Below, in pieces: positions 24,622 to 43,342 of a stretch of DNA of 64,000 bases. Location of the stretch: the IMG/VR virus record IMGVR_UViG_3300046323_000587, positions 124,001 through 188,000 of that record. One strand, given 5' to 3'. Each line of letters opens with the position of its first letter. Position 1 is the first letter of the stretch. Below the pieces are notes generated by a model. The model was not told the DNA's origin and ran no database searches. It saw only the letters and a list, made by a program, of their open reading frames with translations. A program made the position numbers and the translations under genes.

Positions 24622-24704
24622 TTAATTTAGCTAACACTACTATTAAATTTTATTAGCTAATTCATTAAGACTTTTAAGAAATAATCTAGTATTAGCTAAA
24701 TTAA
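24622..24704. repeat. 18-bp inverted repeat (17/18) with 47-nt spacer in the 5' region of the 1552-aa gene
   Basis: ttaatttagctaacacta (24622-24639) vs tagtattagctaaattaa (24687-24704); the mismatch is a G.U pair in the minus-strand RNA; TTAGCTAA palindrome occurs three times (24627, 24653, 24692). Confidence 0.75.
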
Positions 24705-24712
24705 CTAATTTA

Positions 24713-25081: not shown

Positions 25082-25093
25082 ATCTTATATATT

Positions 25094-25122
25094 TTATTAA
25101 ATGTTATTAAATGTTATTAAAT
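25094..25122. repeat. Short intergenic tandem repeat (TTATTAAATG) x ~3
   Basis: ttattaaatg ttattaaatg ttattaaat read directly upstream of the 25081 start. Confidence 0.6.
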
Positions 25123-25147
25123 ATTACTATTAATTTTAAAATCATTA

Positions 25148-26986: not shown

Positions 26987-26988
26987 TA

Positions 26989-28929
26989 TTAAGCTTTTTT
27001 AATTACTTTATTTTTATTGTCAATAGTATTATTCAATAACTGTTGAGTAAATAATTTACCTAATTCAATAGCTTTGATATCTTTTTTGTTATTTAAAAAA
27101 TCATAAGCCATTTTTTCAACTTTATCAGCTATCTCTTTATGAATAATTAACTCATCTACTTCAATTTCTGAATGTTTTTCAGGAATTCCTTCATTAACAT
27201 AAGCAACAACTGGAACTCCTTTACGACCTAAATCTAATTCTTTTGGAATATTATTATTTCTAGCGTGTAATACACCATCAACAATTTTATTTGTTTTACC
27301 AGATAAATCATAAACAATTTGTCCTCCGTGTTTAAATTGTTGATAGCCCGTAGATGGACTGTTTGAACCAGCCTCTTCACTTTGATTTTGAGATTCTTGT
27401 TGATACATTTGTTTAGCTTGCTCTAGTTGTTCGGGTTGTAGAGATTTTAACTTAGCGTCAAACTCTTCTTGTGAACGAACACCTAATTTTTGAGCTAACC
27501 ATTGCATAAACGCTGGATCTGGTTGTTCTTGTGGGACTTCTTGTTCTCCTCCTTCTTGATGCCTAAGTTTTTTTACTTTATTCATAGATCTTTGTAATTC
27601 TAAAGAAGGTTTGAGTAAAGGATTATAATTTAAAATAGATCCAGTCTGACAATTTTCTAATTTTTTATTTAATTTTTTGTTTAGTCTATTGCTTAAATCA
27701 GAATTAGTAGTAAGTTTTGTACCATTTTTCCAAATCCCAAATAATTTTGGATGTTTTTTTTCTCTATAATATTCTTTTGGAATATATTTATGTTCATCTT
27801 CTTTAATTTTATCGAAGTTATTAAAGTTTTTACTAGGTTTTAAAGGTACTCCATTAATAAGAGATTCTCTTTCTTCATCTATTAATTCAAGTAAATAAGC
27901 TTCTGTATCATTAAGTTTTGGTCTATTTGTTAATTGCGTATATTGTCTTTGAAGTTCTTCTAATCTTTTTTGTTTTTTTACTTCATTGACATCTGATTTG
28001 AACTCATTTCCTTTTTGATATTTTATTAATCCTCCTTGAAGGTGTTTTTCAACTAACATAATAATCTTTTTACTTACTTGAGGATGAATTTTTTCTTTAA
28101 GATAATCAATTAATCTTAAACGTTGTTCTAATGCCTTATGTTTTAATAATTGGTTTGTTTCTTCATCAAATACTCCATTATTACGACGATCTCCAATAGA
28201 ATGTTGAATAATCTTGATTTGAGTTGGATGTAATTCTTTTAGTACGTCTGTATCAATACCATCAGAATCAATATCACAAGGTAGTTCAACTTTCATACCA
28301 CGACGAGCCATTTGAGAAGCATATTGAGCAAAATTAGCTTTTTGTTGATTGTCTAATTCTTGTTGCATTGCAGCTTGATTCTTTTTAAGTTTTTCTTCTT
28401 TATCAAATTTACTATCTTGACCTGTTAATTTAGCAAAACCATCTGACAAAGAACCTCCTCCAAGTATATTTAAAGCAGCTCCTCCTAAATTAGTAACTCC
28501 GTCAGCAGCTATACCTAATACAGGAGCAGCAACACTTCCTAAACCAGGAACTAAAGCATTTAAACCTTGTTCTGCTCCCATTTTAATACCAGCAGAAATA
28601 TTCTTTTCTAAGCCATTTTGTTTTTGATTGATTAAGTCTGTTGGAACTACACTACTTAATAATTGTCCTGCCATTCCTGCTAATCCACTACCAGAAGCAA
28701 TATTTCCAGCTAATGAAGCTAATCCAGAAGGGTTTGTACTTGGTGTAGGTGTATTTACTGGTTTAATATCAACTCCTTTTATTGGTTGTTGCCCTAAATT
28801 CCCAACTAATCCTTTTGGTCTAGTTAATTCTAACATATTTACATTAGGCATTTTTTCAGGTAACTTACCAGCAGGTAATTGAAATTTTAGTACAGAACCA
28901 TACTTATTTTTAAATTTATTTGTTATCAT
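26989..28929 (-). CDS. Multi-module tagged crAss-type virion protein (646 aa)
   Basis: About seven tags (KFQLPAG, MARRGMK, KHLQGGLIKYQKGN, WKNGTK, NCQTGS, RHQEGG, QFKHGG); Gly/Ala hydrophobic N-module; C-terminal DGVLHARNNN...KGVPVV...SEIEVDELI segment typical of a Crassvirales post-muzzle protein. Confidence 0.65.
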   Translation of the reverse strand: MITNKFKNKYGSVLKFQLPAGKLPEKMPNVNMLELTRPKGLVGNLGQQPIKGVDIKPVNTPTPSTNPSGLASLAGNIASGSGLAGMAGQLLSSVVPTDLINQKQNGLEKNISAGIKMGAEQGLNALVPGLGSVAAPVLGIAADGVTNLGGAALNILGGGSLSDGFAKLTGQDSKFDKEEKLKKNQAAMQQELDNQQKANFAQYASQMARRGMKVELPCDIDSDGIDTDVLKELHPTQIKIIQHSIGDRRNNGVFDEETNQLLKHKALEQRLRLIDYLKEKIHPQVSKKIIMLVEKHLQGGLIKYQKGNEFKSDVNEVKKQKRLEELQRQYTQLTNRPKLNDTEAYLLELIDEERESLINGVPLKPSKNFNNFDKIKEDEHKYIPKEYYREKKHPKLFGIWKNGTKLTTNSDLSNRLNKKLNKKLENCQTGSILNYNPLLKPSLELQRSMNKVKKLRHQEGGEQEVPQEQPDPAFMQWLAQKLGVRSQEEFDAKLKSLQPEQLEQAKQMYQQESQNQSEEAGSNSPSTGYQQFKHGGQIVYDLSGKTNKIVDGVLHARNNNIPKELDLGRKGVPVVAYVNEGIPEKHSEIEVDELIIHKEIADKVEKMAYDFLNNKKDIKAIELGKLFTQQLLNNTIDNKNKVIKKA

Positions 28930-29818
28930 TTATAAAATCATTTAATAAAAATTTATTATTGTTTGCAATCATTTCCCAAATAGGTAAATTTTCTATTCGA
29001 TCCATTTCAAGATATTCTTTTTGCAATTCTACATCTACTCTATAATATTTTAAACCTTGTTTTTTATACAAATTAAGTGAATAATCTACTACATCACTTC
29101 CAGCTTTCATAAAACTTTCAATAAGAGGGAATTTACTTTTGTGTATCAACCAATCTAACATACCCCAATCTTCATTATTTACATTTAAGTTAGCTTCCGC
29201 AGAATATCCTGTTCCTAATGATAACACAACTATATTAGAAATATTAATTCCTTTACTAATAGCTTCATTTACAGCTATTTGAGCAGGATTATTTGAAACA
29301 ATTCCTCCATCTATATAAGAATCTTTATCAATTATCCAAGGATTAAAATAGGTAGGAGCAGCAGTAGAAGAACAAATTGCTTCTAAATAAGAGGTAGTAG
29401 AATCTTTATAGGATTTAAATAATTTAACTTTATTTTTAGTAAAATTAAAACTAGTCATAATAAAATCAAATGTACTTTCGGATAATTTTTTATCTATTGG
29501 AATATACTTAGCTAAGGAATTATACAGATTCATATTATCATATTTAGCTCTAATTGCAGAAAATATAAATCTAAATTTTTTTTTGAAAATATTTTTAGCT
29601 TCTTGTTTATATAGTTCTATAATATCTTTCGAAGAATATTTTAACGACAACATTGCAGTTATAATAGAACCAGTAGAAGAACTTGCATATAAATTAAACT
29701 TAGTTGTATCAAAACCAACAGAATCTAAGTGGTCTAACATAACAGCGGGAATAATTCCTTTTAAGCCTCCACCATCAATAGACAATATATAATATTTCTT
29801 ATCAATCATATTTAACAT
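28916..29818 (-). CDS. Patatin-like phospholipase
   Basis: ILSIDGGGLKG oxyanion loop, SSSTG nucleophile elbow (GxSxG variant), SSTAAPTYF, catalytic IDGG + NNP, VLSLGTG. Confidence 0.92.
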   Translation of the reverse strand: MLNMIDKKYYILSIDGGGLKGIIPAVMLDHLDSVGFDTTKFNLYASSSTGSIITAMLSLKYSSKDIIELYKQEAKNIFKKKFRFIFSAIRAKYDNMNLYNSLAKYIPIDKKLSESTFDFIMTSFNFTKNKVKLFKSYKDSTTSYLEAICSSTAAPTYFNPWIIDKDSYIDGGIVSNNPAQIAVNEAISKGINISNIVVLSLGTGYSAEANLNVNNEDWGMLDWLIHKSKFPLIESFMKAGSDVVDYSLNLYKKQGLKYYRVDVELQKEYLEMDRIENLPIWEMIANNNKFLLNDFINDNK

Positions 29819-29871
29819 ATTTAAAAGGTTTAAAATTTGTATTTTGAACTTATAACTTTAAATTTATAACT

Positions 29872-30252
29872 TTAAACAGGTTTAGCATAATTAATTTCTT
29901 GATCATTAATAGTTTTTAAGAATGTCAGATAAAAATTATGTAGATTTTCTGGTTTAATATCACTAGAAGACAACTTTCTATTTTTTACTTGTTGTTGTAA
30001 CCAATTTTGAAACTGTTCAAAATCTCTTTTATCAGGATCAAACATTCCACCTAATTGCATTTTTCTCATAGTTTTTGCAAAATTAGCTCTTTTATTTATT
30101 GTAGAATTAGAAGATTTTAAACCTTGTGAAATACAAGCATCAGTGACTTTTGTAAAACCTTTTTGTTTGCAATATTCAGTAAATTTTCCTTTAGTTTTAT
30201 TTTTATCCATATTTTTTACTGCTTTTTTTAACCAATTATTTTTCTCTATCAT
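29872..30252 (-). CDS. Small basic tagged crAss-type protein (126 aa)
   Basis: KGKFTEYC...VTDACI...KRANFAKTMRKMQLGG, a basic module that I recall from Crassvirales; KMQLGG tag. Confidence 0.7.
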   Translation of the reverse strand: MIEKNNWLKKAVKNMDKNKTKGKFTEYCKQKGFTKVTDACISQGLKSSNSTINKRANFAKTMRKMQLGGMFDPDKRDFEQFQNWLQQQVKNRKLSSSDIKPENLHNFYLTFLKTINDQEINYAKPV

Positions 30253-30426: not shown

Positions 30427-33400
30427 TTAACTAAAAGATTCTAAATATTTAGTAACAATAGCTTGTATCATAGAATATTCCATTCCTTCATAAGTAATTT
30501 TTATTCTACAATATTTATCTCTAATTTGTCTATTATTACCAAATACACTTTTAGCAGGATTAATAGAGCCTAATTTATCATTAGTATTTTTATCTATCTG
30601 AATGTAGTGAATATTTTCTCTATACTCGTGATTAGCGTGAATAATACCAACAATAGTAGGATCTAAACTTCCTTTATCGTAAGCATAACGATCTCTATAT
30701 CTTGATAAAATAGGTTGTTCAAGATATATTTTATTAGGGTACGGCAATACATCATCTCTTTTAAATTCATTGTCGTTAGTATATTCTATTTTAGTTGGTG
30801 GAACTTCATTTGCAATTATAGTAAGATTAGTAAATACTTTATGTTGTAATCCATCAACTACTACAAACTCTATAACAAATTCTTTTTGTTCTCCATAATA
30901 ATTACAATAAAGAGGTATTCCAGAAGCAGTAACAGCTGTATGATGTTGCCAAATTTGTTCTGTGTTAGATGTTAAAGGAAAAGAATGTAAATCTCCTGTT
31001 ATAGAAAAGGCTCTTGAAGGATACCAAGTATAATAAGTTGTCCAACGACCATTTCCACCTTGTTGTTCATTCCAAGCAATATGATGTTTAAATGAACCTT
31101 CTTCTTTTGGTGATTTAATTTCAGCTATTTTATATCCAGATATTTTATCTACTGTAACTGGTACACAACTTGTAATTGGTGGTGGTGCCGGTGCATCATA
31201 ATAAAAAGACACATTTGTATATAAACCAAAACCACTATTTCTATCAGAAAGCCACCCTTTATAAGTATTTGTAGAAGAAGGTGGTAGTATAGGATATGGT
31301 GGTAAAGGGATGTTTAATCCGTTAATAGTTAAAGTTATATTACCCAAAGAATCTACTGTCCAAATATGTAAAGATTCTACTCCATCTGGTATAACATAAG
31401 CAGGTAAAGCTGACATAGTGGCTACACCATTAACATAAATTTCAAAACCTCCCCACAGATTTCTAGAATTAATATGTCCAACACAAATGCTATTACCGCC
31501 ATAAAATAATCCTGCCATTTGTGCAGGATAAGCAAACATATTTACAATATATGTAGTTGTATAACTAAAAGTAAAAGCAATAGTAGAAAAATTAGTTGTT
31601 ACTGATTTTCCTCCATCATTTGGGTCTGTTGTATCATAACCCCAACCAGGTGAATTTATATCTATATCAACTGAAGTAGATTGTATATTAGATACTATGC
31701 CACGTATATAGTTAGTTTCTAATGTCAATATACTTCCTCCTATACCACTAATTTGTTCACAACAATAATCTCCTGCATAAATAGTAATTAAATCATAGTT
31801 ATTATTAATAAAAGTAAAATGAACATTATTTTTATTTCCATCATAAAATCCGTACACTTCATTATTCAATAAAGTAATATTTTTATTAACTAATTCATTT
31901 TGTACTTTAACTAACAAAGTTTGCAATCTAAAATCACTTATCAATTGCAATTGACCATTAAATCTCCATATTTTATGATTATTAATATCAACTCCATAAA
32001 TAGATTCTCCAGTTGATACAATACTAAATTGCCATCTAGTTCCGTACCCATTTCCTACATAAGCATTTCTAGAATTTAATACTTGTCCTTCACTTATATA
32101 AATACTTGCAGCTGTATCATTATTTAATAGTTGTCTTTCATCAATAGGTATATAAGATAATTCTCTTTCTTGAATAATGAATAATTTATCTCCTTGAAAT
32201 TCTTTTATAGCTACAATCTCACCATATTGAGAATCATAATCTTGTTTGGAAGAATGTTGAAGATACCTATAACTATTAATAAATGAATTTTTTACATTTA
32301 AATTAGAAAATACAACTCTTGTTTCAAATCTATTTGTAATATAAGGTAAAGAAGTATCTAAAGCTATTGTAAATCTTCCCATAGAGCTGTATTCAAATCC
32401 TATATTTGCTTGTTTAGTTTCTAATAAATTATATTCAGAAAAAGGATTGCTTCCACCAAATGGGTCTCCTTCTCCAGTAGTAAAAGACATATTATAAGGA
32501 AAGAAAGATCTTTTTCTTAATTCTTCTACTTCCACTAATTCAGGTTCCCTAGATGAATAATTGTAATTGTTTTCAGTTACTATTGAAATAGTATAACCTA
32601 ATCTAGTTGTTTTTGCTGATTCATCACTATTAATTTCTGTACGAGACACATTTTTTGCATTATTACGATAAATCTTTTTATATCCAACATTAATAAAACA
32701 ATCACCTTGAAAAGCAGTAATAGTATCATTAGTTAATACATTAAAATTACCAGTTGAAGGTTTAGTAGAAGGAAAGTAGTATCTATCTGTAATAGCAAAA
32801 TATTGTTCATTTGCAGGTTGATACTTATTCTTAAATATATCTTGACGAACAGTTTTATTTAAAAAATCAGTTTTATAGATATTAATTATTCTATTAGATA
32901 CCAAAGTATTTGAAGGATTGTATTCACTAGGTGTAAATCCAGCTAACATACCTTCTTTTCCATCATATAAAGTAGATACATCAGAAGGTACTCCTATATT
33001 GCTAATATCATTGCTGTATCTATTAGTGATAGGATATCTTTCAGATAATTTTACTCCTATATAATCTTCAAATGTAAGTGGATGATAAGTATATTGTCTA
33101 TCATTATCTTCTGCAAAATCATTTATTTTAACTACTGCAGTAAATTCAGCTTGTGAAGAAAACACATTAGGAGATACACCGGCACTATCTTGAAATACAT
33201 AATCTAGTGAAGCTTTAAGATTTCTTTTAAATGTTGGACCTACAAATGTATGAGAAACTGTCTTTAATAAAGAAAAAGTTGAAGAAGTTGAATTATTTTT
33301 ACTATACCTAGTTTTATTAGGGTAATACATTTTTAAATTAGCTTGACCAAGAGTATGTAAATAAAAAGACACTCCAGCTAATTTTTGACTATATATAGTT

Positions 33401-35580
33401 TTATTAACACTTAAATCATTTGAATAAAAAGCAAATCTTTTATATTGTTCCTCAAAAGGTGTCCATCTTCCGTGATATTTAGTTGGACCTAATAAACCAT
33501 TAGTTACTCCCCATTTAGAATCTCCTCCTCCGTTAAGATAAGGATTTTTGCCTACTTCATTAGAATTACCGTCATCATCAGTTTCTTCATCATCTACATC
33601 AGCTTCAAATAAACCCAAAGATTCTAGCATATAACCAAAAGCAGGTATAAATTTACTGTTAGCCATACTAAAATTAGTGGAATTAGGTCTTTTCACATCA
33701 CTTGTATCAAATTCAAAAGCATCAAATTTCCAATGTGCATTACCTACTCCAGCATTATTATAGTTTTGTAATTGAGAGCCGTACAAATCTCCACCTGGTC
33801 CACCTGTATCATAAGGACTTTTATGTAATGTAGGAACTAATAAAGTATCAATCATATAACCTTGTGTTAATACATCTTCTTTACGATTAGTTCTTACCAT
33901 ATAAAAACCAATAGTACCTTCTGGTTGTGGTTCTCCGATTGGAAAATTAAATTTTACACCTAAAACATTAAATTGAGAAGCTTCCAATACACCTGCAAAA
34001 AGATCTCTTTTAGGAAAACGATAAACTCCTTGAACATTTTCTAAATTAGTTGTATCAAATAAATCAATATTAAATGATTTATAGCTATAAGAAGGAGTAG
34101 CAATTGTATCAAAATTATCTATTCCTCTAATTGGTATTACAGGAGAAGTTGAACCATTTGAGTAAATATAAACAATACCAAAAGAGTAAGTCTCTCCTCC
34201 CCAATAACCTAAATTATAATAAATATTGTTAGAATTATTATAACCAAATCTATCTACACTTCCTGAAATAGCATCTAAGTATTCTATATCATATCCACCA
34301 TTAGATTGAGTTACACCAAAAGCAGGTATTTTTTTAATTTCGTAAGTAGTTGTAATTTTATTTGCGTGAAGTTTTAATAGTTCATAATTATATTGACTTA
34401 TTTTAATATTGCCTATAAATAACCTATTTCTAATTTGACAAATGCTTCTAGCTGTATCTACATCAAGAAAATCTACTGGAAAATTATTGAGATCTTCATT
34501 TACTTTATCTTCTTGACCTGTAAAAGTAAATTCATAAAAAGTGTCTGTAATGGGGTATTTTTTTATTATTGTATAACCAAATTGAGCAGAAACTACTTTT
34601 CCATAAGAATATACATAAGATACTTGAACATAAGAGTAAGAAGTATCAATATTATCTAAACGAAATTTAATTACTTTATTTACATTATCTTTTGTATCAT
34701 CTAAACCTTTTCCTCCTCTTGTAGAAACTACACTATTACCGTGAAACATAGATACCATTGAAGACTCTGATACAATATTAGTATTATTTCCATCCACAGT
34801 AGCAAATCTAAAATAAAACTTATAATTTCCAGTTGGAAAACTACCAAGAGTTGATTCTAATAAACCATTAAAAGTAAGTTTTGTAATTAAAGTAGATTGT
34901 AGAACTAATTTAATTGTATTATTGAAGTTTAAAGAAGAATAGAAATTAGTATCTTTAATTTGAGTACGAAATATGATTTTAGCTTTTTTATTAGGTAATA
35001 CTGAAAAAGCAGAATTAACTATTCTAATTGGATTATAGTTATCTGTAAAGACAATATTCATTGAATTATCATAACTCTTTTGCAATTCAACTTCACAAGG
35101 TTGATTAATATTAAAAGTAAACTCTGCTGCATTAAACTCTCCATAATTAATATAATCTAATAATTGAGAATAGTTTGGATTAGTAAGATTACAATAATTT
35201 CTTAATGGGGAATACTGGTCTATAATAGCACATTCATATTCATTTGGTCTGTTTGGATCTTGTAATAAACCTTCATAATCAGGACTAGGAAATGTACCTA
35301 TTTCTCCTCTTCCTGTAAAAGACTGTCTATCAGCATTATATTCAGCTGAAATAATATAAGCAATTCCATCAACATCTTTAACTCCAATACAAGTGTAATT
35401 AGGTTTTAGTTGAGATAAATAAGTATTACCTCTATTAGTTTGAATTACATTTTCGTTTCCTTGATGTGTAATAAATTCTGCATTTTCAGCATAAGTTAAT
35501 ACATTAGGCGGTGTTTGATAATTGCTAAAATCTTGAACTATACCTTCTTCAAAAGTATTTTGTGCTTGTTTTTGTGGCAT
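30427..35580 (-). CDS. Muzzle / tail stabilisation protein (P22 gp10-like, crAss-type), 1717 aa
   Basis: N-term NTFEEGIVQD...NVLTYAENAEFITHQGNE, GEIGTFPSPDY, DNSMNIVFTDNYNPIRIVN, YYNLGYWGGETYSFGIVY, FQGDCFIN, DYDSQYGEI, C-term IRDKYCRIKITY: hallmark blocks of the Crassvirales muzzle protein. Confidence 0.85.
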   Translation of the reverse strand: MPQKQAQNTFEEGIVQDFSNYQTPPNVLTYAENAEFITHQGNENVIQTNRGNTYLSQLKPNYTCIGVKDVDGIAYIISAEYNADRQSFTGRGEIGTFPSPDYEGLLQDPNRPNEYECAIIDQYSPLRNYCNLTNPNYSQLLDYINYGEFNAAEFTFNINQPCEVELQKSYDNSMNIVFTDNYNPIRIVNSAFSVLPNKKAKIIFRTQIKDTNFYSSLNFNNTIKLVLQSTLITKLTFNGLLESTLGSFPTGNYKFYFRFATVDGNNTNIVSESSMVSMFHGNSVVSTRGGKGLDDTKDNVNKVIKFRLDNIDTSYSYVQVSYVYSYGKVVSAQFGYTIIKKYPITDTFYEFTFTGQEDKVNEDLNNFPVDFLDVDTARSICQIRNRLFIGNIKISQYNYELLKLHANKITTTYEIKKIPAFGVTQSNGGYDIEYLDAISGSVDRFGYNNSNNIYYNLGYWGGETYSFGIVYIYSNGSTSPVIPIRGIDNFDTIATPSYSYKSFNIDLFDTTNLENVQGVYRFPKRDLFAGVLEASQFNVLGVKFNFPIGEPQPEGTIGFYMVRTNRKEDVLTQGYMIDTLLVPTLHKSPYDTGGPGGDLYGSQLQNYNNAGVGNAHWKFDAFEFDTSDVKRPNSTNFSMANSKFIPAFGYMLESLGLFEADVDDEETDDDGNSNEVGKNPYLNGGGDSKWGVTNGLLGPTKYHGRWTPFEEQYKRFAFYSNDLSVNKTIYSQKLAGVSFYLHTLGQANLKMYYPNKTRYSKNNSTSSTFSLLKTVSHTFVGPTFKRNLKASLDYVFQDSAGVSPNVFSSQAEFTAVVKINDFAEDNDRQYTYHPLTFEDYIGVKLSERYPITNRYSNDISNIGVPSDVSTLYDGKEGMLAGFTPSEYNPSNTLVSNRIINIYKTDFLNKTVRQDIFKNKYQPANEQYFAITDRYYFPSTKPSTGNFNVLTNDTITAFQGDCFINVGYKKIYRNNAKNVSRTEINSDESAKTTRLGYTISIVTENNYNYSSREPELVEVEELRKRSFFPYNMSFTTGEGDPFGGSNPFSEYNLLETKQANIGFEYSSMGRFTIALDTSLPYITNRFETRVVFSNLNVKNSFINSYRYLQHSSKQDYDSQYGEIVAIKEFQGDKLFIIQERELSYIPIDERQLLNNDTAASIYISEGQVLNSRNAYVGNGYGTRWQFSIVSTGESIYGVDINNHKIWRFNGQLQLISDFRLQTLLVKVQNELVNKNITLLNNEVYGFYDGNKNNVHFTFINNNYDLITIYAGDYCCEQISGIGGSILTLETNYIRGIVSNIQSTSVDIDINSPGWGYDTTDPNDGGKSVTTNFSTIAFTFSYTTTYIVNMFAYPAQMAGLFYGGNSICVGHINSRNLWGGFEIYVNGVATMSALPAYVIPDGVESLHIWTVDSLGNITLTINGLNIPLPPYPILPPSSTNTYKGWLSDRNSGFGLYTNVSFYYDAPAPPPITSCVPVTVDKISGYKIAEIKSPKEEGSFKHHIAWNEQQGGNGRWTTYYTWYPSRAFSITGDLHSFPLTSNTEQIWQHHTAVTASGIPLYCNYYGEQKEFVIEFVVVDGLQHKVFTNLTIIANEVPPTKIEYTNDNEFKRDDVLPYPNKIYLEQPILSRYRDRYAYDKGSLDPTIVGIIHANHEYRENIHYIQIDKNTNDKLGSINPAKSVFGNNRQIRDKYCRIKITYEGMEYSMIQAIVTKYLESFS

Positions 35581-36116: not shown

Positions 36117-36800
36117 TTAGTATCTAAAATTATTTCTTTTACCATATTGCCAAATATCTTTTTTCTTTAAGATTTTTCGTAATCCATCAATAAAATTATC
36201 TGTAATATAGTCACTAACTCTTGCTTGATTACAAGCTTTTTGCCATTCAGCTATTGCCATTTGAAGTAAATCAGCTCTTCCAATTCCAGAATAAACTTTC
36301 TTTCTTTGATAATTCATATTACAATAATGAGCAAGTGCAATAGCTGTTTTTTCATCAATCATTGGTAATCCGTTATCATCAGAAGTATATCCTCCATAAA
36401 TAATATGAACTTTAGTTTTATATTGAGAATTAATTTTAACTTTATTTCCAAGAAATTCAAAATTAATTAAATTTCCTTGAAATTCATTTTCACTTACTTC
36501 TTCCATTTGACAACAAGAGTGAGTACCAATAATACTTAATCTTTTACAAGGATGATATTTAGTACCAATAGAAACAGATTTAATTATACCTACATTACAA
36601 GGAAGAAATATATCTCCATTACTATCAGCAGTTCCTTCATAAAGGTATGTAGAAGTATAAATATTACCTATTAATGGTAAAGCTATTTGAGCTGAATCTA
36701 AAATTGTGTTTTCATCAATATCAGTTATTCCAAACATTGTAGAAAGATAGAATTTAACTGAATCAATTGAAACAAGTGTGTGTGTTGCGTTATTTTGCAT
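36117..36800 (-). CDS. Tail ring (tubular) protein
   Basis: IFLPCNV...VHIIYGG..SDDNGLPMIDEKTAIALAHYC...WQKACNQAR, conserved crAss ring protein pattern; synteny with muzzle. Confidence 0.75.
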   Translation of the reverse strand: MQNNATHTLVSIDSVKFYLSTMFGITDIDENTILDSAQIALPLIGNIYTSTYLYEGTADSNGDIFLPCNVGIIKSVSIGTKYHPCKRLSIIGTHSCCQMEEVSENEFQGNLINFEFLGNKVKINSQYKTKVHIIYGGYTSDDNGLPMIDEKTAIALAHYCNMNYQRKKVYSGIGRADLLQMAIAEWQKACNQARVSDYITDNFIDGLRKILKKKDIWQYGKRNNFRY

Positions 36801-37602
36801 TGTTATAAATCAAATATTTTAAAATATAAATTGGTAATTTTCCACCATCTTTAAATGATTCAATATCACCAAATTTGTAATTAAATAAATTGGGATCAAT
36901 ATAAGATTTTTTACAAACATTAGGCGTATTATTAAGATAATGAGAAACATACTCAGCTACTTTTTGTATAGCTTGTTTATATTCTTTTTTAGTCTTAGGT
37001 TTAGGTAATTCTTTAATTGATTGATATGCAAACCAATTAGCTCTGAATGTGCGAAAGTCTTTTGAAGAATATTTAACTGAAATCTTATCTTTAATAAATC
37101 TAGTAAATTCTCTATCTGTTATATTGAATACAGGGGAAATCTTATTAGCTAATACTACTTTAATTAAATCACTAAGATGTTTAGGAAAAGAGAATGTATT
37201 TTGAACATGCTTCTTACCAAGAAAATCAAAATGAGCTAATCCTTTACTAAAACTAATATGTTTAGGTAATAATGTAGTCAATCCATAAGTCTTAACAAAT
37301 TTAGATTTGATTTTTGAACCTGGCATAGGTACAGTCATATAGCCATCGCTTGAGCCTAAGTTCCCGGATCTAATTCCGGTTTGTAGCACTAGAAGCAAAC
37401 CTACTGCACAATTATATTCTTTTGTTGTAGGCCTTCCAGGATTTTTCTCTAAAATTTTGTATAACTTATCAACAATGTTCTTATATTCATTAGCTATCAT
37501 TGCAACACGATTAAACTTAACTTCAGTAGAACCAGTTAAATTACCAAAGAATTGAGTTATCTCTCCATCTATTTTAAATGTTTCTGGTTTTAAATCTTTC
37601 AT
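36790..37602 (-). CDS. DNA topoisomerase IB catalytic core (bacterial-type), C-terminal FKDGGKL tag
   Basis: Catalytic pentad intact: TGIRSGN (R), YGLTTL, FDFLGKKHV (K), SKDFRTF (R), LNNTPNVCKKSYIDP (N and nucleophile Y). Lacks the usual N-terminal domain. Confidence 0.9.
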   Translation of the reverse strand: MKDLKPETFKIDGEITQFFGNLTGSTEVKFNRVAMIANEYKNIVDKLYKILEKNPGRPTTKEYNCAVGLLLVLQTGIRSGNLGSSDGYMTVPMPGSKIKSKFVKTYGLTTLLPKHISFSKGLAHFDFLGKKHVQNTFSFPKHLSDLIKVVLANKISPVFNITDREFTRFIKDKISVKYSSKDFRTFRANWFAYQSIKELPKPKTKKEYKQAIQKVAEYVSHYLNNTPNVCKKSYIDPNLFNYKFGDIESFKDGGKLPIYILKYLIYNNAK

Positions 37603-39731
37603 TATTTCTTTTTCTTAATTGATTTATCATATTTCTTCTTTATAGCTTCAAATAAATTACGTTGTCTATCAGTCAATTTTTTTCCTTTAATAGCTCCTTC
37701 TTTTAAACTATTAGTAACAATATCTTTACTCATATTAGTTTTATATTCTTTATCATTAGCTTTAATATTAAATTTCTTTAATGATTTAAGTGTACCTCCT
37801 GATTTATAAGTATATTGTAATGGAATTCCTTTATTAAATTTAGTAGGTTTATTAATATTAGGAAATATCTTTTGGTAGTCTAAAATTTCTCCTAAATGAC
37901 TTCTCATTAAAGATGTTCCTTGAGGGTGTTTTGAAGTAGATTTAAGTTTCTTTTTAATAGAACCTCCTTTTGAATGTTGTTCTTTTTGATTATATAAACC
38001 AGAACCAATACCAACAGTAGAACCTCCTATTAATGCTTTATGTATATTAGGATTACTCCAATCCCATTTACCAAGATGTTCACGGAATAGGGATTTGAAT
38101 TGAGTTGGTTTTCTTACTGCAATAGATTCAGCATTTGTAGAAAATTCTTTTCCAATTACTGCATCATAATCTTTATTTCTAGTAGGCTCAGTCAAACTTT
38201 CTTTATTTAAACTATTTATTTGATTTTCTATTTCTTGTTGTTCTTTTAATTTAGCTGTGAATTCTTTCTTTCTTTCATTCATCCAACTATTTTTTGATCT
38301 ACCTGTATTATTTAATATATTTGGTAAATCAGGATAGCCTTTTATGTGAGATTCATAATAACTGTCTAAAGCTTTATCAAACTCTTCTAAATTATCTGAA
38401 TTCTTACCAAATAATTCTTTTGGAGTTTCTCTAATAATTTTATTAGTTTTGTCTGTAAGTTGTTTTTTATATTCTTCTGATGTTCCGTAAAAAGTTCTTA
38501 CAGATTCGTTATCTAAATTTCCAAAACTTCCAGCTGGTTGATCTGGTCTCTCAATATTATTAGTAAAAGGGGTTTTAGTACTTACTAATAAAGGAGAAAT
38601 ATGTTTAGAATTTTTTACATATTTATCAGGTATATATTTATGAGCATTGACACCTTCGTAAATTGATAATGGGTCAAATCTTTTAAGAGATTCTTCATAT
38701 TGTTCTTTTAATTCATTATTTTTTCTATTTAAATGTAAATCTCTTATTATAGAACTTGCTTCTGGAGTATAAGTGTAAGCATATTTTTTATCTGGAGTAG
38801 CCCAAAATAGTTCTAAATTTTTACTATATTCTGGTTTTACACGTACTTCTCCTTTTTCGGCTCTTTCTGAATTTGATTTACTTCCACCTCTATAATAAAT
38901 ATCTTGTACTTTACTACCCTTTAATTCTTTTTGTGCTTGTTCTGATTTAGTAGAAAGATAAAGTGCATCTGCTATATCATCATCTTTTGTATTTAAATCT
39001 TTATAATACTCTCTAGCACCAGGAATTTCATCTTTTATTTGTCCATACAATTTACTACCTCTATCAACTTCAATACCTTGTTCTTTTGCTTGTTTAAGAA
39101 AATCAGTAAACATTTCAGTATTACTTACATAATCTTTAATAACAGGTTTAAATGTCTTTGCAGCATCTCCAGCTAATCCAAATAATGGTAATACTCCTGC
39201 TAATGTCAATGGTGAAATTTTACCTGTTGATTTATATTCTTTCCAAGCATCAGAAGCACCTTTAACATCTCCAATTACTGGTAACATATCTGCAACAGTA
39301 TTAACAATAGATTTACTTACAGCTTTGTTATCCATTGTTTTATCAAGTTTATCTTTTGTATTAGGAACATTCACATTACCTAATGTAGCAGTAGTATTCT
39401 TTTGTCTAGGTAAAAGATTAGCTTCTTGTGATTGTCTTTGAGACATACCAAATCCACTAGCATTACCGCCACGTTCTTTTTCTATACGTCTCTGAATAGC
39501 TAATCTCGTACTCATATCATCACCTTGTTCTTCTGATAGTTTTTCAATCTCTTGTTGTTGTTCTCTTTTATCAGATAATAAACCTTTATTGATTTTAAAT
39601 TCAAAATAGCTGATTGCTCTACTATTTTTATGCTTAATAGCATTAGCATACATATTTCTTTCAACTGGTGAAAGATGCTTATTAGCACCAACTTGTAATG
39701 CTTGTTTATCTCCGTCTTGATATTTATTCAT
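37602..39731 (-). CDS. Tagged polymorphic-effector-like protein: shared N-domain, pre-toxin TG-like helix, ADP-ribosyltransferase (ART-PolyVal-like) domain (709 aa)
   Basis: MNKYQDG start; TVADMLPVIGDVKG...LAGVLPLFG (~39170-39310); SKVQDIYYRGG...LFWATPDKKYAYTY...KTPF...DYDAVI...ESIAVRKPTQFKS...GKWDWSNPNIH (~38030-38930); tags HSKGGSI and YKSGGTL. Confidence 0.65.
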   Translation of the reverse strand: MNKYQDGDKQALQVGANKHLSPVERNMYANAIKHKNSRAISYFEFKINKGLLSDKREQQQEIEKLSEEQGDDMSTRLAIQRRIEKERGGNASGFGMSQRQSQEANLLPRQKNTTATLGNVNVPNTKDKLDKTMDNKAVSKSIVNTVADMLPVIGDVKGASDAWKEYKSTGKISPLTLAGVLPLFGLAGDAAKTFKPVIKDYVSNTEMFTDFLKQAKEQGIEVDRGSKLYGQIKDEIPGAREYYKDLNTKDDDIADALYLSTKSEQAQKELKGSKVQDIYYRGGSKSNSERAEKGEVRVKPEYSKNLELFWATPDKKYAYTYTPEASSIIRDLHLNRKNNELKEQYEESLKRFDPLSIYEGVNAHKYIPDKYVKNSKHISPLLVSTKTPFTNNIERPDQPAGSFGNLDNESVRTFYGTSEEYKKQLTDKTNKIIRETPKELFGKNSDNLEEFDKALDSYYESHIKGYPDLPNILNNTGRSKNSWMNERKKEFTAKLKEQQEIENQINSLNKESLTEPTRNKDYDAVIGKEFSTNAESIAVRKPTQFKSLFREHLGKWDWSNPNIHKALIGGSTVGIGSGLYNQKEQHSKGGSIKKKLKSTSKHPQGTSLMRSHLGEILDYQKIFPNINKPTKFNKGIPLQYTYKSGGTLKSLKKFNIKANDKEYKTNMSKDIVTNSLKEGAIKGKKLTDRQRNLFEAIKKKYDKSIKKKK

Positions 39732-39736: not shown

Positions 39737-41884
39737 TTATTTATTTAATAATTTTATATTCTTTAAGAACTTCTGTTTATCAATATTAATCTTATCTTTC
39801 TTTAAATCTTTTAATACATAATCAGAGATTTCTTTTCTATTAGACTTATTTTTCACTTTATTAAGAATTGTAGTAATTCCTGAAATCATTTCTTTAATGT
39901 CTGATGTATTCTTTCCTCCTTTACTATACTTTAAAGGTTTTTTAAGTAACAACTCTTTTGGTTTCTTTACTACTTTGCCTACATAATCTATCAAATCAGG
40001 TTCAATAATAGAGTGAGCTTCGTGTTCAACTGTACCAGGAATTTTATATCTTAGATTGTTCCCAATTTTATCGTACAATATTTGTTTTGGTAGAAAAGAA
40101 AAATCATTAGTATTTTGAATACCAGTAAAGTATTTTGTTAATTCTGGAATATTATCCATTATCCAATCAGCTGAATTTTGATTTGCATTATGATAATTAT
40201 CAATAATTTCTTTTGTATGGCTTGTTTGAGGTTCTCTATTTAATTCATTTCCAATATGAGTTGTTTTACTTACTTTTTGTAAAGCGTGAGGAATTTCACT
40301 AATTAAATCTTGATAAGAATTTGGATTAACTGTAATCTTGTGTTCTATAGGGGTATAAAAAGCTCTTGTATTATTTTTATTTAATTCAATTTCTGGATTT
40401 CCTGATTCTTCTAACAGTTGTTTAATCCTAACTTTATGAGAAGGAAGTAAATTTGAGTTAGACAGCAATTTATTTAAATTATCTTTTGTCATTTGTTTTA
40501 TAGAACTTAACTCTATCTTACTTCCTTTTTGAAATTTCATTAAAAATTTAAGTTTGTTTCCTTTTTTATATATTTGATTTTGTTGTTCTGGTGAACTAGA
40601 CTTATTTAAATAAGAATTTATTCCAACTGCTGGTAAAGCTACTGCTGGTAATTTATTCATTGCAGAAACAAATTTTTTCTTGTCTTTAAGGTAACTTAAT
40701 AAATCTTTTTTATCTTGTGAGAAGTTATTAAAGTTATTGTCTATATCTTGTTCTGTAAGTAATTTATAAGGATCTTTAGGATTTATTTGATGTCTAATTT
40801 CTTGCATTCTTGCGGATATCTCTGTAGGTTTTAAAAGATATTCAGCATTTCTATAGTTTTTATCTTTATCTAAAATTTCATTAAATTCATATAAAGGTTT
40901 ATCTGAATGTAATTTTTTATAATTATCTCGAATATTGTCTAAATCAGTATTTCCATTTTCTGAAAATCCGTCAAGCAATAATTTTTCTTGTTTTGGGTAT
41001 ATTAAATTATTACTTTGAGTTCTATTATGATCTAATTCATGTATTCCAGTATTTTTTATATCTGGCATACTAGGATCTAAAAAAACATTTGTTTCTGCTT
41101 TAACTATTTTATCTGTTGTTTTATTTAAATTAGGTATAGCAGAATATATTTCTTTATTTTCTATTGGAGTATCTCCTAATAAAGGATAGTGTACGCCCAT
41201 ATTACCTTGTAATATATCTTGATCCTTAGTAAGTTGTGGTGTAATTGCATTAGTTCTTTTTCTCATTTTAGCTATATCTTCATTTATATACCCTACTGCT
41301 AAGGCCCTTCTTTCAAATTCTGGACTATTAATTTGTTTTCTGTATGCTTCTGTACCAGCATTTAATTCTTTTTGTGCAGAAGATTTAGTTAAATTATTTT
41401 TTAACTCTAAAGCAGCTTCTTTTACTTCTTTACCAAATTGATTTAATTTCTTTTTAGTTACTGTAACAACTGGTTTTACTACATTTTTAGCTAAATTGGT
41501 TATTTTTTGTACACCTTTTTGAGCTAATTTTTTAACTACTGCTTTACCTAATAAACTTGTACCTCCAGTTAAAGCAGTTTCAGCTATTTGTTCAAAAGTA
41601 TCATCTGGATTAATTTTACCTGTTGCCATACCAGTTTTAGCATCAATTAAGCCTTTATTAATTTTATCTTGTCTAGAGCCTTCTACAACTCTATTTGAAG
41701 CTTCTTTAGCTTTTTGTATCAATTCCCTATTAAGAAATACTCCTACATCATTTTTACCTTTACTAGGATTGTTTTGAGATTCCCATAAAGAACGTGGTTT
41801 GTTGTTTCCTGTACGTTTAATATATTGTTCATAAGTCTCTACTGTTTTAGCAGGAAACTGAAATTTCTTGTATGATTTAATCAT
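39737..41884 (-). CDS. Tagged two-module zincin-like metallopeptidase protein (715 aa)
   Basis: Module 1 GIHELDH + YLLKPTEISARMQEIR; junction YKKGNKLKFLMKFQKGS; module 2 RAFY...SEIPHALQ...YKIPGTVEHEAH; KYSKGG before a small C-terminal domain. Confidence 0.7.
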   Translation of the reverse strand: MIKSYKKFQFPAKTVETYEQYIKRTGNNKPRSLWESQNNPSKGKNDVGVFLNRELIQKAKEASNRVVEGSRQDKINKGLIDAKTGMATGKINPDDTFEQIAETALTGGTSLLGKAVVKKLAQKGVQKITNLAKNVVKPVVTVTKKKLNQFGKEVKEAALELKNNLTKSSAQKELNAGTEAYRKQINSPEFERRALAVGYINEDIAKMRKRTNAITPQLTKDQDILQGNMGVHYPLLGDTPIENKEIYSAIPNLNKTTDKIVKAETNVFLDPSMPDIKNTGIHELDHNRTQSNNLIYPKQEKLLLDGFSENGNTDLDNIRDNYKKLHSDKPLYEFNEILDKDKNYRNAEYLLKPTEISARMQEIRHQINPKDPYKLLTEQDIDNNFNNFSQDKKDLLSYLKDKKKFVSAMNKLPAVALPAVGINSYLNKSSSPEQQNQIYKKGNKLKFLMKFQKGSKIELSSIKQMTKDNLNKLLSNSNLLPSHKVRIKQLLEESGNPEIELNKNNTRAFYTPIEHKITVNPNSYQDLISEIPHALQKVSKTTHIGNELNREPQTSHTKEIIDNYHNANQNSADWIMDNIPELTKYFTGIQNTNDFSFLPKQILYDKIGNNLRYKIPGTVEHEAHSIIEPDLIDYVGKVVKKPKELLLKKPLKYSKGGKNTSDIKEMISGITTILNKVKNKSNRKEISDYVLKDLKKDKINIDKQKFLKNIKLLNK

Positions 41885-43342
41885 TGTTGTCTAATTTAAA
41901 TTTATATAAAGAAAATAATTTTCCTCCTTTTGAGTAAGCAGGTATTACAAATGCAGCTCCAGAAAACCCTTTTGCATAAGTATTGTAATCTTTCCACTGA
42001 GCTGTAGACAATTGATTTTTACTATTTGCTTTTGGTTTTGCTGAATATCTTCCCATATCTTGATAAGTAAAATGCAGATCTTTTGGATTTAATTCATAAT
42101 CTTTAATAATTTGTTCTCCTTGTTCTTTTAAAACTTCTGGAATTCCAGATACATCTATACCTATTTGTTTACCATTTTTATCAGTAAAGAGATAAGTTAC
42201 GCTTCCTCCACTAAATCTAGAAAAATTTTGATTTCCTGTACTAGATATACTTGTTTCTTGACCTTTTTTTGTTGGAATATAATTAGATTTTTGTCCAATT
42301 TGCCAACCTGTAGACTTTCCTTTATTATTCCAGTCTATGTTTGCAAAAGAGTTAGATCTAACTGGTAATTTACTATCGTAACCTTCTTCGTCTAAATATT
42401 TTTTGTTATTTAAATCAATTCCTTTTATATCTTTAAATTTTTTATACCTAACTAAATATTCTCCATTGAGTTGTTTTTTATGTTGAGCTATATAAGTATC
42501 GGGAGTTTGTGGAATATCTGGTAAAAATATATCTTCGTACTTAGATTTTACTGGACCACTTTTCCAATCACTATGTTGTTTTGTATTTTTTTGATTTGGT
42601 GTAATGTCTCCGTCCATAATAAAATGAGATACACCTAATACATTATTTAATGTACTATCTTTAGACATTTCGTTTTAATTTAGGTAATACAATTGTTCTT
42701 CCTCCTGTAGAGTTATCAAAAGTTCTTTTAAAAGAGTGTAATTCTCCATTTTTATCTTTAGCAACTCTTAACAATTCATAAGATTCTCTATATTTCTCTT
42801 CAGGTGTTTTTGAATTTGATTTTGAGTTTAGTTTTGAATCTGATTTTGAATTGTTGTTAGAAGTAGATTTTTTAGGCTCTACTTTAATTAATTTTGATCC
42901 TCATCTTTTGTAGTCAATTTATCTCACCCTCGTTTCAATCCTCCTACAACAACAGTAGCGTTATCAGGAGTAAATATCGAAGTAACTCTATTTACAAATG
43001 AAGGTTCTTGATCAGTTTTGCTTGAATTTTTATTCTCGTTTTGAGAGATAAAACTATTTTCTGTAGAACTTTGTTTAAAATTGTTTTGAGTGTTTGGTAG
43101 TCTATTAAGAGTAATAGGAGTAGTTTTTTGTCTATTTAAAATAGATTTATTTAATTCTAATCTATTTTTATTTGTGTTTTCTAAATTATTTTGTTTTAGA
43201 TAATCTTGGTAAGCTTTTTCTGTTTTTGGTCCCCAAGCTCCATTTATTTTTACACCTAAAACAGACTGTATTTTTTTATTTTTTCAACACCATTTTCATT
43301 TATTTTGCCATTATTTTGAAACTTTTCTATAAATTTTTTCAT
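41877..43342 (-). pseudogene. Disrupted tagged cargo gene (PG-binding-like N-domain + unknown enzyme-like domain); ORF 41877..42668 is its 3' remnant
   Basis: ATG 43342 MKKFIEKFQNNG; one base short in the A7 run at 43271-43277 (restores IKKIQSVLGVKINGAWGPKTEKAY); in-frame TGA at 42924-42926 (GLKRG*DKL); one base short near 42900; one base extra near 42670; ends AYSKGGKLFSLYKFKL. Reconstructed length ~488 aa. Confidence 0.7.

What the first reader, a model, noticed from the sequence alone, without database searches (positions are those of the whole stretch)
36790..37602. Tagged minimal topoisomerase IB in the virion module of a phage with virion RNAP-type cargo
Seen: intact R-K-R-N-Y pentad, missing N-domain, C-terminal SFKDGGKL tag, coupled to a ring gene. 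Established: poxviruses package TopIB, which supports early transcription by the virion RNAP; crAss-like phages eject a virion RNAP. Inference: convergent encapsidated topoisomerase relieving supercoils during injection or early transcription; alternatively a tyrosine-recombinase-like role in cassette shuffling.
Basis: partly seen in the sequence, partly recalled or inferred. Interest (0 to 1): 0.75.

Follow-up and report, generated by a model that had tools for sequence, protein, structure and literature searches.

The report
Cargo-linked minimal topoisomerase IB, crAss-like phage
A jumbo crAss-like freshwater phage encodes a stripped-down but intact type IB DNA topoisomerase whose tail carries the short motif found on the phage's injected "cargo" proteins, so it is probably packed into the virion and injected with the DNA, though no one has yet looked for it in virions.

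Summary
The pentad is R78-K130-R184-N225-Y234. The model superposes on solved TopIB catalytic domains (Z about 20-21), and a beta-hairpin replaces the about 80-aa N-terminal domain. It is the only topoisomerase gene found in the 226-kb phage genome.

The "tag" is real but not private to this protein. SFKDGG is one copy of a K-aromatic-x-x-G-G motif that is 13-fold enriched in the tail/cargo gene block, and it also recurs in crAss001 gp45, a proven virion cargo protein.

- All crAss-associated TopIBs form one clade.
- In four other lineages the gene lies 2-4 genes after the muzzle gene, the cargo-gene position.
- In six protein clusters the TopIB module is fused inside 764-1512-aa multi-module proteins, with the motif after it in all six and before it in five.
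- Untagged relatives sit among small early or accessory genes in loci and records with no crAss markers.

So "virion cargo TopIB" is well supported by comparative genomics but unproven. Linkage to the ring gene is specific to this lineage. The recombinase alternative is not supported. Whether the motif is a docking signal, a cleavage site or a hinge is open.

The parts
36790..37602 (-). TopIB gene, 270 aa plus stop. Its start shares one base with the stop of the upstream 709-aa gene (TAATG), and its stop overlaps the downstream ring gene by 11 nt.
37525..37602 (-). Residues 1-26. A short beta-hairpin (strands 7-11 and 14-18) stands in place of the about 80-aa N-terminal DNA-binding domain of poxvirus and bacterial TopIB.
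36853..37524 (-). Residues 27-250, the TopIB catalytic domain. Active-site codons: R78 (37369-37371), K130 (37213-37215), R184 (37051-37053), N225 (36928-36930), Y234 (36901-36903).
36793..36858 (-). Residues 249-270, the C-terminal tag. It is the S-F-K-D-G-G junction motif followed by a hydrophobic or amphipathic tail (predicted helix 258-268, pLDDT 67-77).
36117..36800 (-). Ring/adaptor protein of R1 type, 227 aa, immediately downstream.
   Evidence: Pfam CrAss_Ring_1 E 2e-4, below the cut-off. Homologous (E 1e-17 to 1e-19) to the gene after Ring_2 in L002, L004 and L010. The model's best PDB match is the crAss001 portal-assembly chain 7qog_B, E 3.7e-8.
37602..39731 (-). 709-aa motif-bearing protein (HSKGG at 589, YKSGG at 645). 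It is syntenic with TopIB in relative L002.
   Evidence: E 2e-59 to the L002 601-aa protein
39737..41884 (-). 715-aa motif-bearing protein (KYSKGG at 656) with an HELDH (HExxH) zincin-type motif at residue 282.
41877..42668 (-). 263-aa protein with the C-terminal tag AYSKGG-KLFSLYKF.
45657..45974 (-). 105-aa DUF5754 protein with the C-terminal tag TWKQGG-KLNSLLKF. The same module is fused C-terminal to TopIB in L015 (E 2e-33).
47770..48087 (-). Small protein just upstream of Ring_2 with the C-terminal tag TFKLGG-ILSSFNKI.
14666..30252 (-). Gene run downstream of the muzzle gene. The protein-coding genes of at least 100 aa here are 126, 300 (patatin), 646, 612, 122, 1552, 369, 388, 113 and 711 aa. 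The 126-aa gene (29872-30252) is homologous to crAss001 C1/gp45 residues 379-437. The K-aromatic-x-x-GG motif occurs 1-4 times in eight of the ten proteins, near termini or between modules.
30427..35580 (-). Muzzle protein, 1717 aa.
   Evidence: Pfam crAss_MUZ E 7e-36
47107..47766 (-). Ring protein 2.
   Evidence: Pfam CrAss_Ring_2 E 2.9e-11
1..3090 (-). N-terminal 1030 aa of a 3655-aa gp50-type virion RNA polymerase. Its catalytic GSDYDIDKL motif lies just outside the window.

Best explanation
The gene encodes an active-looking minimal type IB topoisomerase: the catalytic domain alone, with an R-K-R-N-Y active site. Crassvirales recruited it into their set of virion cargo proteins.

Shown:
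- It is a TopIB by sequence, active-site residues and fold.
- It is the phage's only detectable topoisomerase gene.
- It lies in the late structural/cargo operon.
- Its C-terminal 'tag' is a copy of a K-aromatic-x-x-G-G junction motif that marks module boundaries and termini of the cargo-cluster proteins, including the homologue of the proven cargo protein C1.
- In related crAss-like phages the same TopIB module is either a tagged stand-alone gene in the post-muzzle cargo cluster or one bead in a long multi-module protein, flanked by the motif.

Inferred:
- The enzyme is made late and loaded into the capsid cargo zone together with the vRNAP and other enzymes (patatin-like phospholipase, zincin-motif protein).
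- The motif acts as a docking signal or as a processing site of the cargo system.
- The enzyme is ejected with the DNA.
- In the cell it would act as an ATP-independent swivel, relaxing the supercoils that build up when a virion RNA polymerase transcribes, and possibly pulls in, a 226-kb genome whose far end is still held in the capsid. This is functionally analogous to the encapsidated poxvirus TopIB.
For: TopIB identity:
- Pfam PF01028, 61 bits.
- The pentad is invariant or nearly so across 67 homologues and aligned to DraTopIB.
- AF2 pLDDT 94.4, and Z 19.6-21.3 to solved TopIBs.
- It is the sole topoisomerase gene found; no type IA or type II is detected.

Cargo context:
- P0008, P0015, P0006 and P0005 lie 2-4 genes after crAss_MUZ.
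- The upstream 709-aa gene is syntenic with L002 (E 2e-59).
- No terminator-like site was found between these genes on the coding strand.

Motif:
- 27 motif-like sites in 8,349 aa of the block against 14 in 55,826 aa elsewhere (Fisher 6e-15). Shuffled sequences give 6.9 +/- 2.7.
- Information is concentrated at -4 K, -3 Y/F/H, -2 Q/K and the GG.
- crAss001 gp45 has seven aromatic-anchored GG motifs plus a basic DGG site. The MQLGG of window 29872-30252 aligns to gp45 NAFGG427.
- gp45 is a virion cargo protein by MS and cryo-EM (PMC10172136).

Fusions:
- Six clusters, P0122-P0127 (764-1512 aa), have the motif 20-32 aa after the catalytic Tyr, or at the equivalent point in P0126, where the Tyr pattern was not located. 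In P0122-P0126 the motif also lies about 10 aa before the fold.
- Two of them are confirmed to lie in crAss-like genomes.

Clade and natural control:
- All crAss-context, tagged or fused TopIBs fall in one clade with support 98.
- None of about 25 loci without crAss markers carries the motif. Those examined sit among small early or accessory genes.

Precedent:
- Vaccinia H6R is a late gene and a known virion enzyme (PMC11980589, PMC1540416).
- crAss cargo proteins are sometimes fused as a polyprotein 'likely cleaved', with a virion zincin-like protease (10.1101/2020.03.07.982082).
Against: - There is no proteomic, structural or enzymatic data for this protein or any member of its clade. No cultured crAss-like phage in the phage collection carries it.
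- Being in a late operon does not prove packaging.
- The motif's function is unknown, so sharing it is guilt by association.
- One cargo-cluster TopIB (P0005) has no tag of its own, and several clade members from short contigs lack it.
- In G001 and G002 the fused gene lies about 16-20 kb upstream of the capsid gene, not next to the muzzle gene.
- Loss of the N-domain may weaken DNA binding. From my own knowledge, the vaccinia 81-314 fragment is active but binds less tightly.
- The swivel role is pure inference.
Confidence: 0.6

Rival explanations
1. The K-aromatic-x-x-G-G motif is a maturation cleavage site rather than a targeting tag. On this reading the cargo proteins are made as polyproteins, or as precursors with short N- or C-terminal extensions, and a virion protease trims them after GG, as in adenovirus and ASFV core-protein processing. 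The 16 residues after GG in this TopIB would be a propeptide that is removed. TopIB would still be cargo.
For: - Sequence information lies mainly on the upstream (P) side plus the GG.
- The motif flanks the TopIB module in the fused proteins.
- Stand-alone TopIBs start at the position right after the upstream GG of the fused forms.
- Tails after the C-terminal GG vary from 2 to 17 residues.
- In L002 a gene boundary falls inside a motif: the upstream gene ends in FKK and the next begins M-GG.
- Drobysheva et al. proposed cleavage of crAss cargo polyproteins and noted a virion zincin-like protease.
- HExxH motifs occur in the 715-aa neighbour and in two giant proteins.
Against: - In crAss001 the portal-bound gp45 domain is modelled as residues 425-552, which includes F426-G427-G428. 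That site is therefore not cut in those copies.
- No clan-CE (PF02902) or C39 (PF03412) protease was found in the genome.
- Residues after GG are hydrophobic and, in L014, conserved as x-L-I-P-K. That looks more like a binding element.
Confidence: 0.3
2. The TopIB is not packaged. It is simply a late-expressed enzyme that relaxes DNA during late replication, concatemer processing or packaging, and the motif serves some other purpose, such as a flexible linker or recruitment to the assembly site.
For: - Untagged relatives in loci and records without crAss markers sit among non-structural genes, next to DNA ligase, GTP cyclohydrolase I and PTPS. This suggests an intracellular DNA-metabolism role for the family at large.
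- It is the phage's only topoisomerase gene, so replication may need it.
Against: - The crAss clade is specifically relocated into the cargo cluster.
- It is physically fused to cargo-type modules.
- It shares the motif with the C1 homologue.
Confidence: 0.2
3. The protein acts as a tyrosine-recombinase-like enzyme that shuffles gene cassettes.
For: - TopIB and tyrosine recombinases share chemistry and a distant fold; recombinases reach Z 11-14.
- The cargo cassette has moved relative to the muzzle gene between lineages.
Against: - TopIBs score Z 19.6-21.3 and the sequence match is to Topoisom_I only.
- There is no recombinase-type N-terminal core-binding domain.
- There are no high-identity inverted or direct repeats around the gene or cassette; all are 70-80% matches typical of AT-rich DNA.
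Confidence: 0.03

Closest known systems
Poxvirus TopIB (vaccinia H6R, variola; PDB 1a41, 2h7f, 3igc)
   Same: - Same catalytic fold (Z about 19.7 over about 200 residues) and the same active-site arrangement.
- Small viral enzyme made late.
- The poxvirus enzyme is a known virion component, in a virus that also carries its own RNA polymerase.
   Different: - The poxvirus enzyme has an 80-aa N-terminal DNA-recognition domain and His at the fourth pentad position. This one has only a beta-hairpin and Asn.
- Virion location here is inferred, not shown.
- This one carries a crAss cargo junction motif that poxvirus TopIB lacks.
Bacterial TopIB (Deinococcus radiodurans, PDB 2f4q/3m4a; Pseudomonas aeruginosa)
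   Same: - Best structural match (Z 21.3, rmsd 2.8 A over 206 residues).
- Same R-K-R-N-Y pentad with Asn.
   Different: - The bacterial enzymes are about 300-350 aa with the N-terminal domain, while relatives P0114-P0120 (296-319 aa) carry the N-domain family PF21338. This one lacks that domain.
- The bacterial enzymes are cellular, not phage cargo.
Short phage TopIB family (e.g. Bacteroides phage BS162P1 'top1E', 254 aa)
   Same: - Same minimal architecture and 38-48% identity. 565 homologues were found, and most of the 120 listed are 240-275 aa.
   Different: - Those examined are untagged and sit among small early or accessory genes of phage contigs with no crAss markers.
- The window's protein belongs to a separate clade tied to crAss cargo clusters.
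Crassvirales cargo proteins (crAss001 C1/gp45, C2/gp46, vRNAP gp47/49/50)
   Same: - Encoded in the same operon region and carrying the same kind of aromatic-x-x-G-G motif as gp45.
- Sometimes fused into long multi-module proteins, as reported for the vRNAP set.
   Different: - No sequence homology between TopIB and any known cargo protein.
- No topoisomerase has been reported among crAss cargo in the papers searched.
Cargo-loading peptides of encapsulins and encapsulation peptides of bacterial microcompartments (analogy from my own knowledge)
   Same: - A short terminal peptide: a glycine-rich hinge plus a short hydrophobic or amphipathic stretch, appended to unrelated enzymes that end up inside a protein shell.
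   Different: - Only an analogy. Binding of this tag to any shell, portal or ring protein was not shown.
- The motif also occurs internally and at N-termini, which these peptides usually do not.

Membership tests
Type IB topoisomerase (Pfam PF01028; poxvirus/bacterial type) | Catalytic-domain sequence match above the curated threshold | tested here: met
   61 bits against a cut-off of 23.7, E 1.4e-16, residues 28-232. The genome-wide scan gives the same single hit.
Type IB topoisomerase (Pfam PF01028; poxvirus/bacterial type) | Active-site pentad Arg-Lys-Arg-(His/Asn)-Tyr | tested here: met
   R78, K130, R184 and Y234 are invariant and N225 is at least 90% conserved in 67 sequences. K130, R184, N225 and Y234 align to DraTopIB K174, R239, N280 and Y289.
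Type IB topoisomerase (Pfam PF01028; poxvirus/bacterial type) | Fold of the catalytic domain | tested here: met
   AF2 pLDDT 94.4. VIA Z 21.3 to 3m4a and 19.7 to 3igc. Foldseek E 1e-9 to 3e-8.
Type IB topoisomerase (Pfam PF01028; poxvirus/bacterial type) | N-terminal DNA-binding domain (vaccinia residues 1-80; PF21338 in relatives) | tested here: not met
   Model residue 23-27 corresponds to residue 80-82 of the solved enzymes. There are 77 residues before the catalytic Arg, against 122-137. PF21338 is absent. The protein is therefore a catalytic-domain-only variant.
Type IB topoisomerase (Pfam PF01028; poxvirus/bacterial type) | ATP-independent relaxation through a covalent 3'-phosphotyrosyl intermediate | not testable with these tools
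   Needs a plasmid relaxation and cleavage assay with a Y234F control.
Tyrosine recombinase | Closest fold and sequence family, N-terminal core-binding domain, and cognate recombination sites | tested here: not met
   Recombinases reach Z 14.1 or less and Foldseek E 1e-3 or worse. There is no Pfam integrase hit. There are no credible flanking repeats.
Crassvirales virion cargo protein set | Encoded in the structural/cargo operon next to the ring, muzzle and cargo genes | tested here: met
   In the window it lies between Ring_2 and the R1-type gene. In relatives it lies 2-4 genes after the muzzle gene.
Crassvirales virion cargo protein set | Shares sequence features with proven cargo (the aromatic-x-x-G-G junction motif of C1/gp45) | tested here: met
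   The motif is at residues 250-254. It is enriched 13-fold in the block, present in gp45, and aligned between the C1 homologue and gp45. The motif's role is itself unknown.
Crassvirales virion cargo protein set | Detected in purified virions (MS or cryo-EM) | not testable with these tools
   The phage is uncultured and comes from freshwater metagenomes. No cultured crAss-like phage in the phage collection has the gene.
crAss ring protein R1 (downstream gene 36117-36800) | Pfam CrAss_Ring_1 match, or fold match to a crAss001 ring protein | tested here: inconclusive
   The Pfam match is 21.3 bits, under the cut-off of 27. hhalign against gp43 gives only 31 columns. The model (pLDDT 65.7) has crAss001 portal-assembly chain 7qog_B as its best hit, E 3.7e-8, followed by other phage adaptor proteins. 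Synteny with the gene after Ring_2 in three relatives agrees. It is certainly a ring/adaptor-type protein; R1 specifically is likely.

The most novel reading that the evidence does not exclude
K-aromatic-x-x-G-G is the shared recognition code of the Crassvirales cargo system. It would be read by one virion component, either a docking site on the portal, ring or capsid, or the virion zincin protease. It would define which proteins are loaded and how multi-module cargo proteins are organised or cut. Through this code a topoisomerase was recruited as an injected enzyme that serves as the swivel for vRNAP-driven early transcription and genome entry. That would be the first phage known to inject a topoisomerase, convergent with poxviruses.
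Probability: 0.3. Interest if true: 0.8.

Novelty: new variant of a known kind. Interest (0 to 1): 0.62.

Why it matters
If the enzyme is packaged, crAss-like phages would deliver a topology-managing enzyme as well as an RNA polymerase with their DNA. This bears on an open question: how these phages start transcription, and possibly draw in very large genomes, without relying on host enzymes.

The broader by-product may matter more. A short, statistically robust junction motif marks the cargo-cluster proteins across distant crAss-like lineages, including crAss001 gp45. It gives a testable handle on how cargo is selected, anchored or processed in this abundant phage order, and a simple sequence rule for predicting new cargo enzymes: here a TopIB, a zincin-motif protein and small DUF5754 modules. 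The motif-less patatin-like phospholipase in the same block would not be predicted by that rule.

Tried and rejected
- **Complex prediction.** I folded two copies of the R1-type protein, two of Ring_2 and TopIB residues 225-270. The verdict was 'no answer' (score 0.00, controls not run). This is evidence neither for nor against binding.
- **Proteases that cut after Gly-Gly.** Pfam Peptidase_C48 and Peptidase_C39 were not found in the genome. Distant or novel proteases are not excluded.
- **NCBIfam and PHROGs.** They gave nothing useful for TopIB or its neighbours.
- **crAss001 vRNAP and cargo proteins against the genome.** phmmer found only the C1 fragment. The vRNAP link rests on a 59-aa local alignment around the DxDxD motif.
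- **R1 identity by sequence.** BLAST and hhalign against gp43 gave only a 31-residue match. It was settled at fold level.
- **Literature.** Searches for crAss plus topoisomerase, for phage TopIB, and for Crassvirales protease or ejection proteins found no prior report.
- **Solved-structure sequences.** The PDB holds gp45 as full-length SEQRES, so the modelled residue ranges could not be checked beyond the paper's text.
- **Recombination sites.** A search for inverted or direct repeats around the cassette found only chance-level AT-rich matches, plus the DNA image of the motif itself.
- **Sequencing runs.** Only freshwater DNA metagenomes hold the region and no RNA run was shown to hold it, so expression timing could not be checked.
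Full report
**What is at the coordinates**

window:36790-37602 on the - strand is a 270-aa ORF. It sits in a long, uninterrupted run of - strand genes. Its ATG shares one base with the stop of the upstream 709-aa gene (TAATG). Its stop overlaps the start of the downstream 227-aa gene by 11 nt. No terminator-like site was found between these genes on the coding strand.

**The phage**

The window is the structural/cargo half of a crAss-like phage.
- Pfam finds the Crassvirus major capsid protein (52398-53786), ring protein 2 (47107-47766) and the muzzle protein (30427-35580), plus a patatin-like phospholipase (28916-29818).
- The whole record is a 226,480-bp virus contig with GC 25% and an estimated completeness of 95%. 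It is seen in several freshwater metagenomes.
- Window 1-3090 holds the first 1030 residues of a 3655-aa protein. The GSDYDIDKL motif of that protein aligns with the catalytic GSDFDVDKL of crAss001 gp50.
- The 'virion RNAP-type cargo' premise therefore holds.

**It is a TopIB**

- Pfam Topoisom_I scores 61 bits against a cut-off of 23.7.
- Sequence search of the PDB finds D. radiodurans, vaccinia and variola TopIB.
- In an alignment of 67 homologues R78, K130, R184 and Y234 are invariant and N225 is nearly so. Four of the five align directly to DraTopIB K174, R239, N280 and Y289.
- The AlphaFold model is confident (pLDDT 94.4). It superposes on DraTopIB with Z 21.3 (model 23-247 on chain 80-302) and on variola TopIB with Z 19.7 (model 27-250 on chain 82-290). 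Tyrosine recombinases reach only Z 14 or less.
- The enzyme therefore starts where the catalytic domain of known TopIBs starts. A beta-hairpin (residues 7-18) replaces the 80-residue N-terminal domain.
- This is a family trait. 565 homologues were found, and most of the 120 listed are 240-275 aa. Only distant relatives of 296-319 aa carry the N-domain family PF21338.
- The genome has no other detectable topoisomerase gene.

**The tag is a shared motif, not a private tag**

A strict pattern around SFKDGG occurs only in four consecutive genes: the 263-, 715- and 709-aa proteins and TopIB. A looser look shows a motif, K-(Y/F/H)-(Q/K/R)-x-G-G, near N-termini, near C-termini and between modules of most proteins of the tail/cargo block.
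- It occurs 27 times in 8,349 residues of the block and 14 times in 55,826 residues elsewhere (Fisher 6e-15). Shuffled sequences give 6.9 +/- 2.7.
- Information is concentrated at positions -4 to -2 and the GG.
- A C-terminal subtype, GG followed by a short hydrophobic or amphipathic stretch, ends TopIB, the 263-aa protein and two small proteins (45657-45974 and 47770-48087). It also occurs 65 residues from the end of the 709-aa protein.

**Link to proven cargo**

In crAss001 the cargo proteins C1 (gp45), C2 (gp46) and the vRNAP subunits were found in virions by MS, and parts of C1 were seen bound to the portal and to rings R1/R2 (PMC10172136).
- gp45 has seven aromatic-anchored GG motifs and one basic DGG site.
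- The window's 126-aa gene just after the muzzle gene is homologous to gp45 379-437. Its MQLGG aligns with gp45 NAFGG427.
- In gp45 the two ordered, virion-bound segments (214-245 and 425-552) start at or just after such motifs.

**Comparative genomics**

- The nearest relatives of the TopIB carry similar C-terminal extensions of the form K-x-aromatic-GG-hydrophobic. Most of the family does not.
- Tagged P0008, P0015 and P0006, and untagged P0005, each lie 2-4 genes downstream of a crAss muzzle gene, among motif-rich proteins. That is the position of C1/C2 in crAss001.
- The 709-aa gene upstream of the window's TopIB is the homologue (E 2e-59) of a cargo-cluster gene near TopIB in L002. In this phage the cassette has therefore moved to between Ring_2 and the R1-type gene. 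A second assembly, L013, shows the same order.
- The downstream gene is a ring/adaptor protein: its model best matches a crAss001 portal-assembly chain. TopIB is not next to it in the other lineages.
- Untagged TopIBs (BS162P1, P0043, P0029, P0020) lie among small early or accessory genes. The contigs tested lack crAss markers.
- In a tree, all crAss-context, tagged or fused sequences form one clade with support 98.

**Fusions**

In six protein clusters (764-1512 aa) the TopIB module is embedded in a multi-module protein. Two of these are confirmed to lie in crAss-like genomes.
- In all six the motif follows the module, 20-32 residues after the catalytic Tyr where that Tyr was located. In five of them the motif also lies about 10 residues before the fold begins.
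- Stand-alone TopIBs start right after the position of the upstream GG.
- The C-terminal module of the L015 fusion is the window's separate 105-aa DUF5754 protein (E 2e-33).
- The motif's flavour is lineage-specific but shared among different proteins of one genome, for example GG-x-L-I-P-K in L014. This suggests a common reader.

**Interpretation**

- The evidence places this TopIB in the Crassvirales cargo set with reasonable confidence (about 0.6-0.7). No experiment exists.
- What the motif does is open. It could be a docking signal, a maturation cleavage site or a hinge.
  - The cleavage reading has a precedent: cargo polyproteins 'likely cleaved' and a virion zincin-like protease have been proposed (10.1101/2020.03.07.982082).
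  - The crAss001 model, which includes F426-G427-G428, argues against cleavage at that site.
  - No GG-specific cysteine protease was found.
- The proposed role is a co-injected, ATP-independent swivel that supports vRNAP transcription of a topologically constrained 226-kb genome. It is inferred by analogy with the late-made, virion-associated poxvirus TopIB.
- The recombinase idea has no support.

**Novelty**

No paper in the library links Crassvirales, or any phage virion, to a TopIB. The enzyme is a new variant of a known kind. The junction motif appears undescribed in the papers read and is worth following up.

Noticed in passing
window 14666-48087 (- strand genes); also L002, L004, L010, L011, L014, L015; crAss001 gp45 (L006:11988-14516): A pervasive K-aromatic-x-x-G-G junction motif marks the termini and module boundaries of cargo-cluster proteins. 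It is 13-fold enriched over the rest of the genome. It has lineage-specific flavours, for example FKKGG in L002/L011, GG-x-LIPK in L014 and N-x-F-x-x-GG in crAss001. It is often doubled as GG-hydrophobic-hydrophobic-K-Y-Q-x-G.
   Followed up: partly
window 39737-41884 (-): The 715-aa motif-bearing protein has an HELDH (HExxH) zincin-type motif at residue 282. Two giant proteins outside the window also have HExxH (genome 97478-102952 and 104614-111642). These are candidate virion metalloproteases of the kind proposed for phi14:2 gp65. There is no Pfam support.
   Followed up: partly
window 28916-29818 (-): A patatin-like phospholipase (Pfam E 2e-24) is encoded inside the post-muzzle cargo block. 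It is a plausible ejected membrane-attacking enzyme. It has no junction motif of its own.
   Followed up: no
window 45657-45974 (-) and L015:8330-11464: A small DUF5754 protein with the C-terminal tag is a separate gene here, but it forms the C-terminal module of the TopIB fusion protein in a 245-kb crAss-like relative (E 2e-33).
   Followed up: partly
window 3092-14593 and 1-3090 (-); genome 97478-138593: Five consecutive giant genes (3833, 3655, 1446, 2342 and 1824 aa) with a 478-aa gene among them. Only the 3655-aa one shows the vRNAP DxDxD motif. The 3833-aa protein has no Pfam hit at all.
   Followed up: partly
whole genome G000 (226,480 bp): This is a jumbo crAss-like phage from freshwater with GC 25%. 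Its + strand early/replication half (1-97 kb) and - strand structural half (97-209 kb) are cleanly separated. TopIB is its only detectable topoisomerase gene.
   Followed up: partly
L011:3273-4382: An IS605-type TnpB/OrfB gene is inserted inside the cargo gene cluster of a crAss-like relative, two genes upstream of its TopIB.
   Followed up: no
window 55150-56805 (-): A 551-aa protein with four DUF5977 repeats (Pfam E 2e-57) lies among fibre-like genes upstream of the capsid gene.
   Followed up: no
window 37780-37808, 39208-39236, 40542-40570: A 29-nt direct-repeat family (72-76% identity to the reference copy). The reference copy at 37780-37808 is the DNA of the YKSGG motif in the 709-aa gene. 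It is not a regulatory repeat.
   Followed up: yes
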